Positions 42,180 to 64,000 of a DNA stretch of 64,000 bases are shown here, one piece after another; within the stretch, counting starts at the first letter, position 1; every line of letters begins with the position of its first letter. Location of the stretch: NCBI RefSeq assembly GCF_006345805.1, contig NC_043009.1, positions 24,676,001 through 24,740,000 of the forward strand. The letters run 5' to 3'. Made by a program: the position numbers and the translations under genes. This DNA is from Octopus sinensis (lineage: Eukaryota). The notes below the pieces were generated by a model that worked only from the letters and a program-made list of their open reading frames with translations, made no database searches and was not told the DNA's origin.

Positions 42180-44635
42180 TTTCTTTATTAGCCACACAGG
42201 GCTGCACACAGATAGAACAAATTACAAGGTAGAGCTTTTCTTTTGAAGGTATTAAGAAAAAAAAAAAAAAAAAAAGGGAAGGGGGTTTCGATCAAAAGGG
42301 ATCGTAAAAGGAGAGAACGAGGACAAAAAATGGGGGGTTAAAAAAAAGGGGGGGGGAGGAAAAAAAAATGATCAATAGGGATCGTTATCACAAATGTCAA
42401 TATGAAGTGTAAAGGGGAGGACAGGTGAGGTTTCCCGTGGAAAGAAAAGCTGCGAAAAGACCACGGTAACCTCGTCAATGAAGTCACATTTTATATTTCT
42501 TTTTTTTTTTTTTTTTTTGCAAATAAGCAACTCTCTGTTTTCGATTTCTGGTTCATAGGACTATGCTCAAGGTGCTTCGTCATTCATACGTGCCATTCTT
42601 GCTACATTCACCATCTTTTTTTAAAACATTCGCTAGACAAAACTTGCCTCTCTACTCTCACTTTCCTTTTCAAGTGGTACTTGAAGAATTGATGAGAGAT
42701 TGACCAGAGAGAAAGTGTTTGTCTCCAATCCTTTCAGACGCGTCCACCAGATACATTCTTTCGCCATAGCCACAAGGATGATGAAAATAGCTCTTCCTTC
42801 CCGTTTGAAGGAAGGAGGCGTGACAATATGACGATAGACTCAGCTGATAAACCGACTCGTCCCACACGTGACAGCAGTTGTTCGACATAAGCCCACAGGT
42901 CGGAAATTGTTGGACACTGAACGAGTGCGTGCAGAACGGTTCGTCGTCGCTCTGACCGCATCTCGGCAGGTCGGCCCCGTGTTTCTCGAGCCGTGTCTGT
43001 AGAGCTTATCCCGAACGGGTACGCTTCTCGGTAGCACTGCCAGGCCAGGGATCTCTGGAAGTTGTCCATGGGCCCTGGCCCGAAAGTCGTCCCGACAGGC
43101 GGGTCAGGTACTCTCCTCGTCGACGTCCAGGTTCGCCCCGAGCTCGTCGTCGTACCTCCCCTCCACTAAACCCCTATAGAATGCTTTGGTTGTGTTGAAG
43201 TCACTTAAGGTCGACCCAGGACGGCAGAGTTGCTTGAGAGCAACGCGACACTCGCGGTGCCATTCGCCCTTCCTCGGCCTCTTTTTGATCCACGACTGCA
43301 GTTCGGTCATGGAGACGAGCTGGCGGAAAGCGTGCCTCAAAACGGGACCACACACACTGTTCACCGTCGTCTACATAGAGCCAGAGATGTCGCAGTCTCA
43401 GCGCGTGTCTGCGCATCATCAACCACGGCATGCCCAGCCCTCCTTTTAACGGGTGTTGACAGCAAATGGATCGCCTGACCATCGGGACGCATCCTTTCCA
43501 CAAGAAGCGAAAGAGGATGCGTTGTAGTTTGGTGATGGTAGGGTCGGGACAAGGTACGACGGTCAGGCGGTAGTAGATGACGGACGCGATGTACGTGTTC
43601 GCCACCTCCGCTCGACCTTTTAGGGACAGTTTCCTCTCGGCCCATTGCCGGGCGAGAGTGACCACCCTACTCGTTATCTCGTTCCAGTTCTTCTCCACTT
43701 GGAGGTCCGGACCAAACCAGACCCCGAGCAACTCAACCGGGCCGTCGGTCCAGCGTCCCACGACGGAGGCGCTGGTGGACGGCATGGGCTGCTTCTCTCA
43801 GGTGCCTAGTCGCAAGCCCACTGACTTTCCCGGTTGATTTTCGCTCCTGTCACCGCTTCGTAGTTTTTCAGTGTCTCGCCGACCAGCTCGATGTGCTCGT
43901 GGCTAGACACTATGACGGTGACGTCGTCCGCGTATGCAGACACGCTCGTCCCGCATCCCAATTCTCGCGGGATGCCCCTTAGAGTCGCCAGCTTCCGCAG
44001 TAGTGGCTCAAGAGTCAATACGTATAGAAGCGCCGAGAGGGGGCATCCCTGACGGACCGAACGTGCAATGTCGAAAGGTCTCGATAGATGTCCATTTACG
44101 CGAATTACCGAACGGATGCCTCTGTACAAGGCAGCTATCCAGCCGCGGAAGACGGGACCGAAACCAGCCGCTCTCAGGACTGCCTCCAAGTATCGATGGT
44201 CTACCACCCTATCAAAGGCTTTTGATTGATCCAAGTTGATCAGGGCCCCACCCATGCCAGGTTCGTTAACTACTCTGTCTATGATGTGCGCATCAGATGG
44301 AGGTTGTCATGGATGGTCCGGCCTGGCACGGCGCATGTTTGCGCCTTGTCGACCAGTTTCTCGATGACAAGCGCCAACCTCTTGGCTAGCACCTTGGCCA
44401 AAATTTTTCAAGTCTGCATTAAGCAGAGTGATGGGCCTAAAGTTTCTATTACATTTCCTTGTTTAGATCTTTCTTCCAGCAGTGTTACGGCTCCTCGGCT
44501 CACAAAACCAGGAATGCTCCCGTTTTGCTGCCAGTTGCAGTACACCGCCGCCAGAGATCTCCAAACAAGTCTGGCATACAATTGTAAAGCTCGTAGGGTA
44601 GACCATCCAAACCGGTGATTTGTCCCTCGAGCATT
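42180..44635 (-). mobile_element. 5'-truncated Tx1/L1-clade non-LTR retrotransposon (RT, C-terminal Cys/His region, 3' UTR), multiply frameshifted
   Basis: GLDGLPYELY; frameshift-corrected FRPITLLNAD.K..AKVLAKRL; LDQSKAFDRV; VRQGCPLS; AYADDVT; LLGVWFG; LSLKGRAEVAN; GGLGMP; TVLHALVQCP. AATAAA-containing 3' end at ~42180-42192. Confidence 0.95.
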
Positions 44636-47326: not shown

Positions 47327-47426
47327 NNNNNNNNNNNNNNNNNNNNNNNNNNNNNNNNNNNNNNNNNNNNNNNNNNNNNNNNNNNNNNNNNNNNNNNNNN
47401 NNNNNNNNNNNNNNNNNNNNNNNNNN
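47327..47426. other. Assembly gap (100 N)
   Basis: Exactly 100 N, so probably a placeholder of unknown size. Confidence 0.99.
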
Positions 47427-52799: not shown

Positions 52800-53690
52800 C
52801 TTTTTATTATAGTCGCAAGGCTTGAAATATTGGCGCACGAGGCCTAGTCACGAACATCAATTTTAGCATTCAAATAGTACTTATTTATCGACCTCGAAAG
52901 GATGAAACGCAAACTCGAGTTCGCGACGATTTGAACTTAGAAATAAAGATGGACGGAATGCCTTTAAGCACTCTGTCTGGCATTATAACGTTTCTGTCAG
53001 ATACAGCCTTTAAACACTACTGTAAATAAAGGTTTCAAATTTGGCATAAGACTAATAATTTTGGTGGCGGTGTTACTCGATAACATTGACCATAGTGGTT
53101 AACTGGTACTTTATTGACATCAAAGTCAACTTCGGCTGAATTTGAACTCAGAACATAAAGATGGGAGAAATACCGCTAAGCATTTTGTCTGAGACGTTAA
53201 CGCTCTACCAGCGCGCCACATTTAAACACTATTTTAAACACTATTTTAATAATTTCAAATTTTAGCACAACGCCAGCAATTTCGAGGAAGCGGGTAAGTC
53301 TATTAAATTGACTCCAGTGTTTAACTGGTACGTAATTCATCAGTCCGAAACGGTGAACGGCAGAGTCGATCCCGGCGGTATTTGGACTCCGAATGTGAAG
53401 TCGAAAGAAATACCGTTAAACATTTTCCCCGGCGCTGTAACGATTCTGCCACCTAACTGCCTTACACTATTTTAATAATCTTTTCTAGTATACGCACAAG
53501 GCTTGACATTTTTGGAGTAGGGTTTAAGTCGATCACATCGACCCCAGCACTTCAATGGTACTTCATTCATCGACACCCCCAAAGGATGAAAGGCGAAGAC
53601 GATCTCGATAGAATTTGAACTCAGAACGTAAAGACGGACGAAATACCGATAAGCAATTTTCCCAGGTGCTAACGATTCTGTTTGCTCTAA
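52800..53690 (-). mobile_element. Head-to-tail array of four diverged SINE family B copies
   Basis: Copies at ~52800-53008, 53030-53220, 53252-53463 and 53478-53685; the spacers share ACACTATTTTAATA-like sequence. Confidence 0.8.
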
Positions 53691-55939: not shown

Positions 55940-56175
55940 TTTATTTCTTTATTGCCCACAGGGGGCTAAACATAGAGGGGACAAACAAGGACAGACAAAC
56001 AGATTAAGTCGATTACATCGACCCTAGTGCGTAACTGGTACTTATTTAATCGACCCCGAAAGGATGAAAAGCTAAGTCGACTTCGGCGGAATTTGAATAC
56101 AGAACGTAACGGCAGACGAAATACGGCTACGCATTTCGCCCGGCGTGCTAACGTTTCTAGCAGCACGCCGCCCTA
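55940..56175 (-). mobile_element. SINE family B monomer ending in the Tx1-like tail
   Basis: Well-preserved body; tail TTTCTTTATTGCCCACAGGGGGCTAAACATAGA at 55944-55976 (as read on +). Confidence 0.85.
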
Positions 56176-57490: not shown

Positions 57491-57521
<31 letters not shown>

Positions 57522-58204
57522 TACACACACACACGCATACACACACACGTATATAAACACATATCTATATATACACGTGTTTATATATACAAGAAGATAT
57601 ACTTCCGTCAGGTCACGTGTGTGTATGTGTTTTCAATGTAGTTTCTCATGGAGAATTGAATTTGCGTTTAGTTTGCCTTATTTGTCTTTGATGAGTGTTG
57701 TTGCATGTAAAACGTTTTGAAATTGTGTCGTTATTTAAAATTCATCGCACAGATGTTTGTTTTGCTGTTCCAATATACACTTTATTAAATTTATGATTCC
57801 AAAGATAGATTCGGTCAAAAAGTTCAAAAATAAATAATGATTAAAAATGATATCAAATATAGCAAGGAGAATGTATATATATATGTGCGTGTGTGTGTGT
57901 GTGTGTTGCGAGTGTGAGTGTGTGTTGTGTGTGTGTGTGTGGTGTGTGTGTGCGTGAAGAAGTTTTAAGAAAAATATGAGAGAATCGAAAAATGAATACG
58001 AACGATAAAAGATATATTACCTTGAGAGAGGTAGTTCGTGATTGATACGAAGAGGAATTTATTCACGCAGATATGCATAAATGTATGTGTATATATATAT
58101 ATTTACGTGCATATATATATGTGTGTGTGTAAGACTGTATAGATGTATAAATATATATATACATATATATATATAAACACATACGAATACTTATATATAT
58201 ATGT

Positions 58205-58240
<36 letters not shown>

Positions 58241-58386
58241 CATAAAACAAATATAAACATACATATATTTACACACAGGAAGAGAGGGAGAGGGAGAGAA
58301 ATTGATAGATTGGTAAACAGATAATATATGTGTGTATATAGATATAACATATATAGAAGTAAAAATGTGATGCCTATGTACACACA

Positions 58387-58430
<44 letters not shown>

Positions 58431-58466
58431 TATATGTATATATATGTATACATATATATATACATA

Positions 58467-61400
58467 ATCAAGGAATGGCCATAATAGGCATTCACCCACT
58501 AGAAATAACAGCCAAAGCTTCAACCGCAAAATAACATTAATCCGCAAACCAGGAGAAAATTAAAAAAACATTTACCCTGTAATTTCTTATTATCGGCAGC
58601 AAAATAAGCCGCCGATTTCCATTACGGAATTAACCAGAAAATTCATAATTATCAATATAGGGTGGCAAAAAATTTCGTAGAATTTATTGCACCAGCGGCC
58701 TAGTGGGAAAAAAATTAAATAGTTAGACCATTTATAAGTTCAACATCACAATCAGGGAATGGCCATAATAGGCCATTCACCCACTAGAAATACGCCAAAG
58801 CTTCAACCCGCAAAAAACATTAATTCCGCAAACCAGGAGAAAATTAAAAAAACATTTACCCTGTAATTTCTTATTATCGGCAGCAAATATAAGCCGCCGA
58901 TTCCATTACGGAATTAACCAGAAAATTCAATTAATCAATATAGGGTGGCAAAAAATTTCGTAGGAATTTATTTGCCACCAGTGGCCTAGGGGGAAAAAAA
59001 TTAAATAGTCATAGACCATTTATAAGTTCAACATCACAATCAAGGAATGGCCATAATAGGCCATTCACCCACTAGAAATAACAGCCAAAGCTTCAACCGC
59101 AAAATAACATTAATTCCGCAAACCAGGAGAAAATAAAAAAACATTTACCCTGTAATTTCTTATTATCGGCAGCAAATATAAGCCGCCGATTCCATTACGG
59201 AATTAACCAGAAAATTCATAATAATCAATATAGGGTGGCAAAAAATCGTAGAATTTATTTGCCACCAGCGGCCTAGTGGAAAAAAATTAAATAGTCATAG
59301 ACCATTATAAGTTCAAAATCACAATCAGGAATGCCAATAGGCCATTCACCCACTAGAAATAACAGCCAAAGCTTCAACCGCAAATAACATTAATTCCGCA
59401 AACCAGGAGAAAATTAAAAAAAACTTTACCCTGTAATTTCTTATTATCGGCAGCAAATATAAGCCGCCGATTCCATTACGGAATTAACCAGAAAATTCAT
59501 AATTAATCAATATAGGTGGCAAAAAATTCGTAGAATTTATTGCCACCAGCGGCCTAGTGGGAAAAATTAAATAGTCATAGACCATTTTAAGTTCAACATC
59601 ACAATCAAGGAATGGCCATAATAGGCCATTCACCCACTAGAAATAACAGCCAAAGCTTCAACCGCAAAATAACATTAATTCCGCAAACCAGGAGAAAATT
59701 AAAAAAACATTTACCCTGTAATTTCTTATTATCGGCAGCAAATATAAGCGCGCGATTCCATTACGGAATTAAACAGAAATTCATAATTAATCAATATAGG
59801 GTGGCAAAAAAATTTCGTAGAATTTATTTGCCACCAGCGGCCTAGTGGGAAAAAAATTAAATAGTCATAGACCATTTATAAGTTCAACATCACAATCAAG
59901 GAATGGCCATAATAGGCCATTCACCCACTAGAAATAACAGCCAAAGCTTCAACCGCAAAATAACATTAATTCCGCAAACCAGGAGAAAATTAAAAAAAAC
60001 ATTTACCTGTAATTTCTTTATTATCGGCAGCAAATATAAGCCGCCGATTCCATTACGGAATTACCAGAAAATTCATAATTAATCAATATAGGGTGGCAAA
60101 AATTTCGTAGAATTTATTTGCCACCAGCGGGCCTAGTGGGAAAAAAATTAAATAGTCATAGACCATTTATAAGTTCAACATCACAATCAAGGATGGCCAT
60201 AATAGGCCATTCACCACTAGAAATAACAGCCAAAGCTTTCAACCGCAAAATAACATTAATTCCGCAAACCAGAGGAAAATTAAAAAAACATTTTACCCTG
60301 TAATTTCTTATATCGGACAGCAAATATAAGCCGCCGATTCCATTACGGAATTAACCAGAAAATTCATAATTAATCAATATAGGGGTGCAAAAAATTTCGT
60401 AGAATTTATTTGCCACCAGCGGCCTAGTGGGAAAAAAATTAAATAGTCATAGACCATTTATAAGTTCAACATCACAATCAAGGAATGGCCATAATAGGCC
60501 ATTCACCCACTAGAAATAACAGCCAAAGCTTCAACCGCAAAATAACATTAATTCCGCAAACCAGGAGAAAATTAAAAAAACATTTACCCTGTAATTTCTT
60601 ATTATCGGCAGCAAATATAAGCCGCCGATTCCATTACGGAATTAACCAGAAAATTCATAATTAATCAATATAGGGTGGCAAAAAATTTCGTAGAATTTAT
60701 TTGCCACCAGCGGCCTAGTGGGAAAAAAATTAAATAGTCATAGACCATTTATAAGTTCAACATCACAATCAAGGAATGGCCATAATAGGCCATTCACCCA
60801 CTAGAAATAACAGCCAAAGCTTCAACCGCAAAATAACATTAATTCCGCAAACCAGGAGAAAATTAAAAAAACATTTACCCTGTAATTTCTTATTATCGGC
60901 AGCAAATATAAGCCGCCGATTCCATTACGGAATTAACCAGAAAATCATAATTAATCAATATAGGGTGGCAAAAATTTCGTAGAATTTATTTGCCACCAGC
61001 GGCCTAGTGGGAAAAAAAATTAATAGTCATAGACCATTTATAAGTTCAACATCACAATCAAGGAATGGCCATAATAGGCCATTCACCACTAGAAATAACA
61101 GCCAAAGCTTCAACCGCAAATAAACATATTAATTCCGCAAACCAGGAGAAAATTAAAAAAAACATTTACCCTGTAATTTCTTATTATCGGCAGCAAATAT
61201 AAGCCGCCGATTCCATTACGGAATTAACCAGAAAATTCATAATAATCAATATAGGGTGGCAAAAAATTTTCGTAGAATTTATTTGCCACCAGCGGCTAGT
61301 GGGAAAAAAATTAAATAGTCATAGACCATTTATAAGTTCAACATCACAATCAAGGAATGGCCATAATAGGCCATTCACCCACTAGAATAACAGCCAAAGC

Positions 61401-62446
61401 TTCAACCGCAAAATAACATTAATTCCGCAAACCAGGAGAAAATTAAAAAACATTTACCCTGTAATTTCTTATTATCGGCAGCAATATAAAGCCGCCGATT
61501 CCATTACGGAATTAACAGAAAATTCATAATTAATCATATAGGGTGGCAAAAAATTTCGTAGAATTTATTTGCCACCAGCGGCCTAGTGGGAAAAAAATTA
61601 AATAGTCATAGACCATTTATAGTTCAACATCACAATCAAGGAATGGCCATAATAGGCCATTCACCCACTAGAAATAACAGCCAAAGCTTCAACCGCAAAA
61701 TAACATTAATTCCGCAAACCAGGAGAAAATTAAAAAAACATTACCCTGTAATTTCTTATTATCGGCAGCAAATATAAGCCGCCGATTCCATTACGGAATT
61801 AACCAGAAAATTCATAATTAATCAATATAGGGTGGCAAAAAATTCGTAGAATTTATTTGCCACCAGCGGCCTAGTGGGAAAAAATTAAATAGTCATAGAC
61901 CATTTATAAGTTCAACATCACAATCAAGGAATGGCCATAATAGGCCATTCACCCACTAGAAATAACAGCCAAAGCTTCAACCGCAAAATAACATAATTCA
62001 GCAAACCAAAACAACAAATCAGCAAACAGGAGAAATTAAAAAAACATTTACCCTGTATTTATTATCGGCAGCAAATATAAGCCGCCGATCATTACGGAAT
62101 TAACCAGAAATTCATAATTAATCAATATAGGGTGGCAAAAAATTTCGTAGAATTATTTGCCACCAGCGGCCTAGTGGGAAAAAAATTAAATAGTCATAGA
62201 CATTTATAGTTCAACATCACAATCAAGGAATTGCCATAATAGGCCATTCACCACTAGAAAATAACGCCAAAGCTTCAACCGCAAATAACATTAATCCGCA
62301 AACCAGGAGAAAATTAAAAAAACATTTACCCTGTAATTTCTTATTATCGGCAGCAAATATAAGCCGCCGATTCCATTACGGAATTAACCAGAAAATCATA
62401 ATTAATCAATATAGGGTGGCAAAAAATTTCGTAGAATTTATTTGCC
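58467..62446 (+). repeat. Tandem array of a 291-bp monomer, forward block (~13.7 units)
   Basis: ATCAAGGAATGGCC recurs, e.g. at 60477 and 60768; units differ mostly by 1-bp indels. Confidence 0.97.
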
Positions 62447-63730
62447 TAGTATGGCCATTCCTTGATTGTGATGTTGAACTTTAAATGGTCTATGACTATT
62501 TAATTTTTTTCCCACTAGGCCGCTGGTGGCAAATAAATTCTACGAAATTTTTTGCCAACCCTATATTGATTAATTATGAATTTTCTGGTTAATTCCGTAA
62601 TGGAATCGGCGGCTTATATTTGCTGCCGATAATAAGAAATTACAGGGTAAATGTTTTTTAATCTTCTCCTGGTTGCGGAATTAATGTTATTTTGCGGTTG
62701 AAGCTTTGGCTGTTATTTCTAGTGGTTGAATGGCCTATTATGGCCATTCCTTGATTGTGATGTTGAACTTATAAATGGTCTATGACTATTTAATTTTTTT
62801 CCCACTAGGCCGCTGGTGGCAAATAAATTCTACGAAATTTTTTGCCACCCTATATTGATTAATATGAATTTTCTGGTTAATTCCGTAATGGAATCGGCGG
62901 CTTATATTTGCTGCCGAGAATAAGAAATTACAGGGTAAATGTTTTTTTTAATTTTCCTGGTTTGCGGAATTAATGTTATTTTGCGGTTGAAGCTTTGGCT
63001 GTTATTTCTAGTGGGGTGAAGGCCCTATTATGGCCATTCCTTGATTGTGATGTGAACTTATAAATGGTCTATGACTATTTAATTTTTTTTCCACTAGGCC
63101 GCTGGTGGCAAATAAATTCTACGAAATTTTTGCCCACCTATATTGATTAATTATGAATTTTCTGGTTAATTCCGTAATGGAATCGGCGGCTTATATTTGC
63201 TGCCGATAATAAGAAATTACAGGGTAAATGTTTTTTTAATTTTCTCCTGGTTTGCGGAATTAATGTTATTTTGCGTTGAAGCTTTGGCTGTTATTTCTAG
63301 TGGGTGAATGCCTATTATGGCCATTCCTTGATTGTGATGTTGAACTTATAATGGTCTATGACTATTTAATTTTTTTCCCACTAGGCCGCGCGTGGCAAAT
63401 AAATTCTACGAAAATTTTTGCCACCCTATATTGATTAATTATGAATTTTCTGGTTAATCCGTAATAATGGAATCGGCGGCTTATATTTGCTCGATAATAA
63501 GAAATTACAGGGTAAATGTTTTTTTAATTTTCTCCTGGTTGCGGAATTAATGTTATTTTGCGGTTGAAGCTTTGGCTGTTATTTCTAGTGGGTGAAGGCC
63601 TTATTTGGCCATCCTTGATTGTGATGTTGAACTTATAAATGGTCTATGACTATTAATTTTTTTCCACTAGGCCCGCTGGTGGCAAATAAATTCTACGAAA
63701 TTTTTTGCCACACCTATATATGATTAATTA
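62447..63730 (-). repeat. Same 291-bp monomer, inverted block (~4.4 units)
   Basis: Reverse complement of the forward unit, from TAGTATGGCCATTCCTTGAT to ...GATTAATTA, then (TA)n. Confidence 0.97.
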
Positions 63731-63837
63731 TATATATACATATATATACATGTATATACATATATATATGTAGATACATACATTCGTACATATATATATA
63801 TATAATATATATAAAAGATATGTGTGTGGGTGGGTGT

Positions 63838-64000
63838 GATGCGCAATGGCCTAGTTGTTAGGGCACCGTACTCGCGGTCATAGTATCGCGGTTTCGATTC
63901 CCAGGCTGGGAATTGTTAGTGTTTATTGAGCGAAAACACTAAAATCTTCACGATGCTCCAGCAGGGGGTGGTGGCAAACTCTGCTGTACTATTTTACCAC
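63838..64000 (+). mobile_element. tRNA-derived SINE head and body (runs off the window)
   Basis: A box TGGCCTAGTTGTT, B box GGTTTCGATTCCC. Confidence 0.6.

What the first reader, a model, noticed from the sequence alone, without database searches (positions are those of the whole stretch)
58467..63730. 291-bp tandem monomer that folds into five nested stems
Seen in the clean unit 60477-60767: A GAATGGCC/GGCCATTC (60483-90/60497-504); B CCCACTAG/CTAGTGGG (60506-13/60715-22); C TTAATTCCG/CGGAATTAA (60548-56/60637-45); D ATCGGCAGC/GCCGCCGAT (60604-12/60621-29, 8 of 9); E GGTGGCAAA/TTTGCCACC (60674-82/60700-08) extended by AAATT/AATTT. B encloses C (which encloses D) and E, so all are compatible; much of the G+C lies in stems and the linkers are A-rich. 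Units are almost free of substitutions. Known: metazoan retrozymes form tandem arrays of similar-sized structured monomers, but I find no CUGANGA hammerhead core on either strand. Inference: a structured RNA or ssDNA unit amplified as a concatemer (rolling-circle-like), perhaps an unrecognised ribozyme or circular-RNA element, not a plain satellite.
Basis: partly seen in the sequence, partly recalled or inferred. Interest (0 to 1): 0.85.

Follow-up and report, generated by a model that had tools for sequence, protein, structure and literature searches.

The report
Hairpin-rich 291-bp satellite repeat array
A 5.3-kb block of about 18 near-identical 291-bp non-coding repeats really does fold far better than chance, but nothing marks it as a ribozyme or RNA gene, so it is best read as satellite DNA rich in internal inverted repeats.

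Summary
A 291-bp monomer is repeated 13.8 times head-to-tail (58466-62446).

The monomer folds much better than dinucleotide shuffles (z -6.0 to -7.7). It is also an outlier among non-microsatellite 291-nt windows of the same region.

The fold is equally strong on both strands and with DNA or RNA parameters, and the stems are almost purely Watson-Crick. It therefore does not point to an RNA.

Negative results:
- No Rfam family matches, even at E up to 10.
- No hammerhead core on either strand.
- No tRNA and no open reading frame.
- No relative in any collection I could search.

Copies differ mainly by scattered 1-bp indels that look like long-read error, so covariation cannot be tested.

Best reading (about 0.55): a recently amplified, non-coding satellite array with monomer-level and array-level dyad symmetry, a pattern already described for beetle satellites. 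A TE-derived array is the main rival. A retrozyme-like structured RNA with an unknown processing motif stays possible but unsupported (about 0.07). Interest is modest.

The parts
58467..62446 (+). Direct sub-array: 13 full monomers plus one monomer cut at unit position about 229.
   Evidence: TRF period 291, 13.8 copies. BLAST monomer coordinates, 89.7-100% identity to the clean unit.
62447..63731 (-). Inverted sub-array: 4 full monomers plus a 112-bp partial monomer. It reads as the reverse complement of the direct sub-array.
   Evidence: TRF period 289, 4.5 copies, reverse-complement consensus. BLAST minus-strand hits 62467-63731. Long inverted-repeat pairs between the two blocks.
62434..62470 (.). 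Inversion junction, ...GAATTTATTTGCC|TAGTATGGCCATTCC.... Forward unit position about 229 (3' arm of hairpin E) is joined to the reverse complement of position about 22 (loop and 3' arm of hairpin A) over a shared GCC. It is not a symmetric fold-back.
   Evidence: Read directly from the sequence against the consensus.
60477..60767 (+). Reference monomer, identical to the array consensus. 291 bp, 34.7% GC, no open frame.
   Evidence: Consensus equals this unit. At least 4 stops in every frame. Fold z -6 to -7.7.
60483..60504 (.). Hairpin A: GAATGGCC / GGCCATTC, 8 bp, 6-nt loop.
   Evidence: Pair probability 1.0.
60506..60722 (.). Long-range stem B: CCCACTAG (60506-13) / CTAGTGGG (60715-22), extended by CCGC (60535-38) / GCGG (60710-13). 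In a multimer the same arms pair just as well across the unit border.
   Evidence: The trimer fold shows cross-unit pairing of B.
60548..60645 (.). Long-range stem C: TTAATTCCG / CGGAATTAA, 9 bp (12 nt at 92%). It encloses helix CAGG/CCTG and hairpin D.
   Evidence: Pair probability 0.88 (plus) and 0.97 (minus).
60604..60629 (.). Hairpin D: ATCGGCAGC / GCCGCCGAT, 8 of 9. The odd position is an A.C mismatch on plus and a G.T wobble on minus.
60674..60708 (.). Hairpin E: GGTGGCAAAAAATTTC / GAATTTATTTGCCACC, 16 nt at 88%. Its inner T.G wobble is possible on plus only.
   Evidence: Pair probability 0.99.
61923..62221 (+). Variant monomer with a 21-bp internal duplication (61984-62027). It is the only clear structural variant among the copies.
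   Evidence: TRF row 61984-62027, period 21. 89.7% identity with 30 gap positions. Alignment A1.
58380..58466 (.). Left flank: (AC)n then TA/TG microsatellite, running directly into unit position 1.
   Evidence: TRF and sequence.
63729..63813 (.). Right flank: (TA)n/TACA microsatellite that starts where the last inverted monomer stops, at unit position about 181. The two flanks together read as one TA/CA-rich tract.
   Evidence: TRF and sequence. Apart from microsatellite, the flanks share no similarity with each other or with the rest of the window.

Best explanation
The locus is a short, recently amplified array of non-coding satellite DNA in a microsatellite-dense metazoan genome.

**Anatomy.** The 291-bp AT-rich monomer carries three local GC-rich palindromes (A, D, E) and two or three longer-range inverted repeats (B, C and a small inner helix). 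It sits inside a TA/CA microsatellite tract.

**Inferred mechanism, not shown.**
- The monomer was multiplied at the DNA level to at least 18 nearly identical head-to-tail copies. Candidate routes are unequal exchange or replication slippage, or rolling-circle copying of an excised circle followed by reintegration.
- A break or template switch inside hairpins E and A then flipped part of the array. This gave a direct plus inverted ('macro-dyad') arrangement.
- The inverted repeats act, if at all, as DNA: as hairpin or cruciform-prone sites, or as protein-binding dyads that favour breakage, template switching and homogenisation.
- No specific RNA product is required by any of this.
For: - Head-to-tail array followed by an inverted sub-array.
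- No ORF, no tRNA, no Rfam family at gathering score or at E up to 10, and no hammerhead core.
- The fold is equally significant on both strands and with DNA parameters.
- The stems are almost all Watson-Crick. One wobble favours each strand (D on minus, E on plus), so there is no strand preference.
- Copies differ by 0.55% substitutions and about 2.5% scattered, mostly singleton indels. Of the deletions, 79% lie in base runs, which is the profile of long-read error on near-identical copies. That points to recent amplification or homogenisation.
- The inversion breakpoints lie inside two of the palindromes, with 3-nt microhomology.
- Precedent: Tribolium satellites have numerous short inverted repeats (under 10 bp) within monomers, plus kilobase direct and inverted sub-arrays (PMC13081366).
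Against: - A z-score of -6 to -7.7 from five to seven separate, mutually compatible helices is stronger than anything non-microsatellite in the same window. It is the kind of value seen for selected RNA structures.
- Long-range stems B and C cannot form as cruciforms in duplex DNA. They need a single strand.
- Linkers on the plus strand are strikingly A-rich and G-poor (A 84, G 5 of 147), and the array has the strongest A-skew in the window.
- The plus strand has no run of four or more T, while the minus strand has six. It also carries a tRNA-type A-box/B-box-like pair at canonical spacing. These are compatible with a transcribed plus strand.
- Genome-wide copy number and location are unknown.
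Confidence: 0.55

Rival explanations
1. The array is the internal tandem-repeat module of a mobile element, or it arose from one. Candidates are a Helentron/HINE-type or MITE-type non-autonomous DNA transposon, or a tRNA-derived SINE whose body was tandemly amplified. On this reading the inverted repeats are remnants of transposon ends or Rep/transposase recognition hairpins.
For: - HINE elements carry short satellite-like arrays preceded by a microsatellite, and have a 3' palindrome (PMC7492417). Here a microsatellite abuts the first monomer.
- Hairpin A is followed 5 nt later by CTAG, which resembles a Helitron 3' end (hairpin then CTRR). This resemblance is from memory.
- Stem C is bounded by TTAA on both sides.
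- An A-box/B-box-like pair is present: 11 of 5000 shuffles give one, a post hoc test.
- Short collinear words are shared with the SINE head at 63830-64000 (note).
- SINEs and a LINE lie in the same window.
Against: - No conserved left or right flank, subterminal inverted repeat or target duplication could be found. The flanks match nothing but microsatellite.
- No solo or partial copy of the unit exists elsewhere in the 64 kb.
- Similarity to the neighbouring SINE is not above shuffles.
- ARAGORN sees no tRNA-like fold.
- Only one locus is available, so element ends cannot be defined.
Confidence: 0.2
2. The plus strand is transcribed (possibly by Pol III read-through) into multimers of a structured 291-nt RNA. 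These are processed to monomers or circles by an unrecognised self-cleaving motif or by host RNases, and are copied back into DNA as concatemers. That would be a retrozyme-like element without a hammerhead.
For: - Size (291 bp), low GC (35%), tandem organisation and a highly self-paired predicted fold match the description of metazoan non-LTR retrozymes (PMC7229834).
- z is -7.7 on plus, with high pair probabilities and low ensemble diversity.
- A/C-rich, G-poor linkers give a cleaner fold on plus than on minus.
- The plus strand has no T4 terminator and carries the A/B-box-like pair.
Against: - The defining hammerhead is absent: no CUGANGA or CNGANGA on either strand.
- No ribozyme of any Rfam class matches at E up to 10.
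- The fold is just as significant on the minus strand and as DNA.
- There is no covariation and there are no homologues.
- An inverted sub-array is not expected from simple concatemer integration.
- The promoter-box match is post hoc, and the B box has 2 mismatches.
Confidence: 0.07
3. Part of what is seen is an assembly artefact. The inverted sub-array, and perhaps the copy number, would come from a chimeric or palindromic long read in a poorly polished repeat. The true locus would then be a simple one-directional array.
For: - The copy differences have a long-read error profile: deletion-biased 1-bp indels, 79% of them in base runs. This shows the region was not well polished.
- The scaffold carries a 100-N gap.
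- A near-spacerless inverted repeat of about 1.2 kb is expected to be unstable in vivo (general knowledge).
Against: - The junction is not a symmetric fold-back. Unit position about 229 is joined to the complement of position about 22, whereas a missed-adapter read would give a perfect palindrome.
- Direct plus inverted sub-arrays were confirmed in raw HiFi reads in other satellites (PMC13081366).
- The inverted block ends in its own microsatellite flank.
Confidence: 0.1

Closest known systems
Satellite DNAs with multi-level dyad symmetry (Tribolium madens TmSat1/TmSat2 and relatives; PMC13081366)
   Same: Tandem non-coding monomers carry numerous short inverted repeats. Arrays are built of a direct and an inverted sub-array of kilobase size, and some arrays adjoin microsatellites.
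   Different: - No sequence relation is shown or expected; sequence similarity to the Tribolium satellites was not tested.
- Only one 5.3-kb euchromatin-like locus is seen here, not megabase (peri)centromeric blocks.
- The stems here include long-range nested pairs that give a branched single-strand fold with z about -7, not just short local dyads or one monomer-long hairpin.
- Conservation of the inversion site across arrays cannot be checked.
Metazoan non-LTR retrozymes (tandem 150-450-bp repeats with a type I hammerhead; PMC7229834)
   Same: Monomer size, low GC, tandem arrangement and a predicted highly self-paired monomer.
   Different: No hammerhead core or any other known self-cleaving motif is present. 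No evidence of RNA or circles is available. An inverted sub-array is present.
Helentron/HINE-borne satellite-like arrays (Crassostrea Cg_HINE, Drosophila DINE-1; PMC7492417)
   Same: A short dispersed-type array lies next to a microsatellite, with palindromes present.
   Different: No left or right flank modules, subterminal inverted repeats or 3' palindrome outside the array could be identified. In place of a right flank, the array runs into its own inverted copy.
Penaeus vannamei PVS1 satellite/microsatellite combination (Bagshaw and Buckholt 1997, as cited in PMC13081366)
   Same: A satellite associated with microsatellite in a microsatellite-rich invertebrate genome.
   Different: PVS1 has units of about 150 bp interspersed with (CCTAA)n. 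Here the units are 291 bp and uninterrupted, with microsatellite only at the two ends. The host of this window is not identified.

Membership tests
Metazoan non-LTR retrozyme | Short tandem repeats of about 150-450 bp with low GC (<45-50%) | tested here: met
   291-bp period, about 18 copies. 34.7% GC. Criterion taken from PMC7229834.
Metazoan non-LTR retrozyme | A type I hammerhead ribozyme (CUGANGA ... GAAA core with helices I-III) in each monomer | tested here: not met
   No CTGANGA or CNGANGA on either strand of the consensus dimer. No hammerhead or other ribozyme family at E up to 10.
Metazoan non-LTR retrozyme | Expressed as monomeric linear and circular, highly self-paired RNA | not testable with these tools
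   Self-pairing is predicted (z -7.7). No transcriptome is available.
Satellite DNA | Head-to-tail tandem array of a non-coding monomer with high intra-array homogeneity | tested here: met
   0.55% substitutions, with at least 4 stops in every frame.
Satellite DNA | Many copies or loci in the genome (abundance, often heterochromatic or centromeric) | not testable with these tools
   Only this 64-kb window is available, and it holds no second locus.
Satellite DNA with macro-dyad symmetry | Array composed of a direct and an inverted sub-array | tested here: met
   13.8 copies on + followed by 4.5 on -. An assembly artefact is not excluded.
Satellite DNA with macro-dyad symmetry | The same conserved inversion site recurring at many arrays | not testable with these tools
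   Only a single junction is seen.
HINE / Helentron-borne tandem repeats | Left flank with subterminal inverted repeat, complementary IR and microsatellite. Right flank with subTIR and a 3' palindrome. | tested here: inconclusive
   A microsatellite adjoins the array, but no conserved flank or subTIR was detectable from one locus. The right-flank position is occupied by the inverted sub-array.
Known structured RNA families (Rfam 15, including all small self-cleaving ribozyme classes, SRP, RNase P/MRP and snRNAs) | Covariance-model match at or near the gathering score | tested here: not met
   0 matches at gathering score in the whole window. The best matches in the array are gltS and snoRNA noise at 14.9-23.5 bits against cut-offs of 39-50.
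tRNA-derived SINE | tRNA-like head with A and B boxes and a cloverleaf-compatible fold | tested here: inconclusive
   A-box-like CGGCCTAGTGG (1 mismatch) and B-box-like AGTTCAACATC (2 mismatches) lie 43 nt apart; 11 of 5000 shuffles give such a pair, a post hoc test. ARAGORN finds no tRNA-like fold. Similarity to the neighbouring SINE is not above shuffles.

The most novel reading that the evidence does not exclude
The plus strand is a Pol III-type read-through transcript. It has an internal A/B-box-like promoter and no T-run terminators. The transcript is made of 291-nt branched RNA modules that are cut or circularised by a self-cleaving motif not yet in Rfam, and are re-integrated as concatemers. 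That would be a hammerhead-less counterpart of animal retrozymes.
Probability: 0.06. Interest if true: 0.85.

Novelty: new member of a known kind. Interest (0 to 1): 0.3.

Why it matters
If it is only a satellite, it adds one more example of monomer-level and array-level dyad symmetry occurring together. It also places an inversion breakpoint inside the monomer's own hairpins. That bears on how non-B DNA shapes satellite arrays.

If instead the fold reflects a selected RNA, it would be a retrozyme-like circular or multimeric RNA element that lacks every known ribozyme. That would point to a new self-processing motif. The sequence alone cannot decide between these, and the deciding experiments are simple.

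Tried and rejected
**Known RNA families.**
- Rfam at gathering score on the whole window: 0 hits.
- Rfam at E up to 10 on 57500-64000 and on a clean dimer: only microsatellite-driven miRNA noise in the flanks, and gltS/snoRNA noise in the array.
- Hammerhead core regexes on both strands: none.
- ARAGORN: no tRNA or tmRNA.

**Coding.**
- Six-frame translation: at least 4 stops per frame although 291 = 3 x 97.

**Homologues.**
- Exact-word scans with four different 22-26-mers: viral contigs, metagenome contigs and prokaryotic genome contigs. All returned 0.
- blastn 'distant' against plasmids and phages: no match.
- A trick search with the longest pseudo-ORF (59 aa), meant to catch gene calls on related repeats: nothing.
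- Full-text search of papers for six sequence words: 0.
- Other copies in the window by nhmmer and blastn with word size 7: none.

**Covariation.**
- Among the 17 copies: 0 compensatory pairs and a covariation term of +2.04. This has no power, because the variation is noise.

**Relation to neighbouring elements.**
- Homology to the neighbouring SINE: Smith-Waterman score not above shuffles.
- Flank symmetry, TSD or TIR: only microsatellite similarity.

**Other origins considered from the sequence.**
- CRESS/nanovirus-type origin (TATTAC nonanucleotide in a hairpin loop), CENP-B box and parvovirus-type terminal hairpin were checked by eye in the sequence. Each was dropped for lack of the motif or architecture.

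**Host identity.**
- The LINE RT ORF's best relative is 77% identical, on a 722-bp contig of assembly GCA_024449705.1. I could not resolve that organism.
Full report
**1. What is there**

The window is eukaryotic and extremely rich in microsatellites: TRF returns 174 rows, mostly di- to tetranucleotide arrays. It has about 26-50% GC, one 100-N scaffold gap and a fragment of a non-LTR reverse transcriptase at 43201-44255 on the minus strand.

At its 3' end TRF finds a 291-bp period from 58466 to 62446 (13.8 copies, 94% matches). Immediately after it comes a 289-bp period from 62445 to 63731 (4.5 copies), whose consensus is the reverse complement of the first. The majority consensus of all copies is identical to that clean unit.

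The junction reads ...GAATTTATTTGCC|TAGTATGGCCATTCC.... Forward unit position about 229, in the 3' arm of hairpin E, is joined to the complement of position about 22, in hairpin A, over a shared GCC. Because the two positions differ, this is not the symmetric fold-back that a missed-adapter read would produce.

Both outer ends run straight into TA/CA microsatellite (58380-58466 and 63729-63813). Joined together, the two flanks read as one microsatellite tract. They share nothing else with each other or with the rest of the window.

**2. The copies**

Seventeen full monomers differ from the consensus by 27 substitutions, 82 deleted bases and 43 inserted bases. Twenty of the inserted bases belong to one 21-bp duplication in the monomer at 61923-62221. 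Of the deletions, 79% fall in runs of two or more identical bases, where 63% would be expected. Almost all variants are singletons.

This is the profile of unpolished long-read error laid over essentially identical copies. The array is therefore young or strongly homogenised. Its internal variation also carries no evolutionary signal: RNAalifold finds 0 of 58 pairs with a compensatory change and a positive covariation term, and all deviations break pairs on one side.

**3. The fold is real and beyond chance**

Two further helices are also present: CCGC/GCGG extending B, and CAGG/CCTG inside C.
- With RNA parameters the plus strand folds at -74.1 kcal/mol, against -41.5 +/- 4.2 for dinucleotide shuffles (z -7.7). 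The minus strand gives -90.6 against -62.0 (z -6.0). Circular folds give z -6.7 and -5.9.
- With DNA parameters, z is -6.6 (plus) and -7.7 (minus).
- Perfect stems of at least 8 bp number 4, against a mean of 1.04 in 1000 shuffles.
- GC-rich stems number 3, against a mean of 0.07, and no shuffle reaches 3.
- As a local yardstick, 81 other 291-nt windows have mean z -1.57 (sd 2.7). Every window below -5 is a self-complementary microsatellite. The monomer has no microsatellite, so it is an outlier among complex sequence.
- Stems A, B, C and E have pair probabilities of 0.88-1.0 on either strand.
- In a trimer, the arms of B pair just as well across the unit border. The 'closing stem' therefore depends on the register chosen.

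**4. Does the fold point to RNA?**

Not by itself. The helices are Watson-Crick dyads and are equally good on both strands and as DNA. The only two non-canonical positions cancel out: D has an A.C mismatch on plus that becomes a G.T wobble on minus, and E has a T.G wobble on plus only.

No Rfam family is matched in the array, either at gathering score or at E up to 10 with lax filters on a 580-nt dimer. This covers all curated self-cleaving ribozyme classes, SRP, RNase P/MRP and snRNAs. Neither strand contains CUGANGA or the looser CNGANGA. ARAGORN finds no tRNA-like gene. Every reading frame has at least four stops.

Some features lean towards a single-stranded plus-strand species:
- Stems B and C are long-range (201 and about 80 nt enclosed), so they cannot form as cruciforms in duplex DNA.
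- Paired positions are 51% GC and unpaired ones 19%.
- Unpaired bases on plus are A 84, T 35, C 23, G 5.
- The array has the highest A-skew in the window.
- The plus strand has no run of four or more T, whereas the minus strand has six.
- The plus strand carries an A-box-like CGGCCTAGTGG and a B-box-like AGTTCAACATC, 43 nt apart. Only 11 of 5000 shuffles give such a pair.

I found the promoter-like pair after looking for it, and the B box has two mismatches, so I treat it as a lead only.

**5. Relatives**

None could be retrieved.
- Four different 22-26-mers give no exact match in viral, metagenome or prokaryotic genome contigs.
- blastn finds nothing in plasmids or phages.
- The longest pseudo-ORF finds no called protein anywhere.
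- Six sequence words occur in no paper of the library.
- No second copy, full or partial, exists in the other 58 kb of the window.

The collections on hand hold little animal DNA, so this absence says little. It does mean the decisive covariation test could not be run.

**6. Comparison with known kinds**

*Metazoan non-LTR retrozymes.* These are defined as 150-450-bp, low-GC tandem repeats that each carry a type I hammerhead and are expressed as highly self-paired circular RNAs (PMC7229834). This repeat meets the size, GC, tandem and self-pairing criteria. It fails the defining one, the ribozyme, so it is not a member.

*Satellite DNAs with dyad symmetry.* This kind is established. In Tribolium madens the dominant satellites have numerous short inverted repeats within the units, and arrays made of direct and inverted sub-arrays of kilobases. 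Those sub-arrays were confirmed on raw HiFi reads, and one satellite is joined to (AC)n microsatellite (PMC13081366). The present locus shows the same two levels.

*Helentron/HINE elements.* These carry short satellite-like arrays preceded by a microsatellite and followed by a palindrome (PMC7492417). The microsatellite is present here, but no flank modules can be recognised from one locus.

**7. Verdict**

The most economical reading is a young satellite array whose monomer is rich in inverted repeats, and whose inversion breakpoint lies in two of those repeats (confidence about 0.55).

The alternatives, with rough confidence:
- a TE-derived array, about 0.2
- an assembly artefact for the inverted part, about 0.1
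- a retrozyme-like structured RNA with an unknown processing motif, about 0.07

The last reading is the interesting one. The in silico evidence neither requires it nor excludes it. RNA, circle and cleavage assays, plus a genome-wide and cross-species survey, would settle it.

**Host**

The host is not established. The microsatellite density and two tRNA-derived SINE families (52884-53660 with 56009-56137, and 63830-64000) indicate an invertebrate. From memory the SINEs resemble those abundant in octopus genomes, but I could not test this.

Noticed in passing
window 52884-53660 and 56009-56137: A diverged (72-86%) repeat family of about 230 bp: three adjacent copies plus one solo copy. The minus strand carries a tRNA-type B box (GTTCAAATTCCGCCG). 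It is probably a tRNA-derived SINE. From memory it resembles an abundant octopus SINE.
   Followed up: partly
window 63830-64000: Head of a second tRNA-derived SINE (ATGGCCTAGTTGTTAGGG ... GGTTTCGATTCCC), cut by the window end. ARAGORN and Rfam do not call it. It shares short collinear words with the satellite (GGCCTAGT, GTCATAG, GGTGGCAAA...TTTNCCAC), but the alignment score is not above shuffles.
   Followed up: yes
window 60711-60721 and 60754-60764 (each monomer): A Pol III A-box-like CGGCCTAGTGG and a B-box-like AGTTCAACATC lie 43 nt apart on the plus strand. The plus strand also lacks any T run of 4 or more, while the minus strand has six. 11 of 5000 shuffles give such a box pair, a post hoc test.
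   Followed up: partly
window 62434-62470: The inversion junction of the array falls inside hairpins E and A, with a 3-nt GCC microhomology. With a loop of about 80 nt, the two sub-arrays could form an inverted repeat of about 1.2 kb.
   Followed up: partly
window 61984-62027: A 21-bp tandem duplication (CAAAACAACATAATTCAGCAAAC x2) inside one monomer. It is the only clear structural variant in the array.
   Followed up: yes
window 43201-44255 (minus strand): Fragmented non-LTR retrotransposon reverse transcriptase (RVT_1, E 2.5e-16). Its best relative is 77% identical, on a 722-bp contig of GCA_024449705.1.
   Followed up: partly
window 1-58000 and 47327-47426: Extraordinary microsatellite density: (TA)n, (AC)n, (AAT)n and (TATC)n arrays up to 900 bp every few hundred bases. 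There is a 100-N scaffold gap. Self-complementary microsatellites give fold z-scores down to -17, which is a trap for structure scans in this genome.
   Followed up: yes
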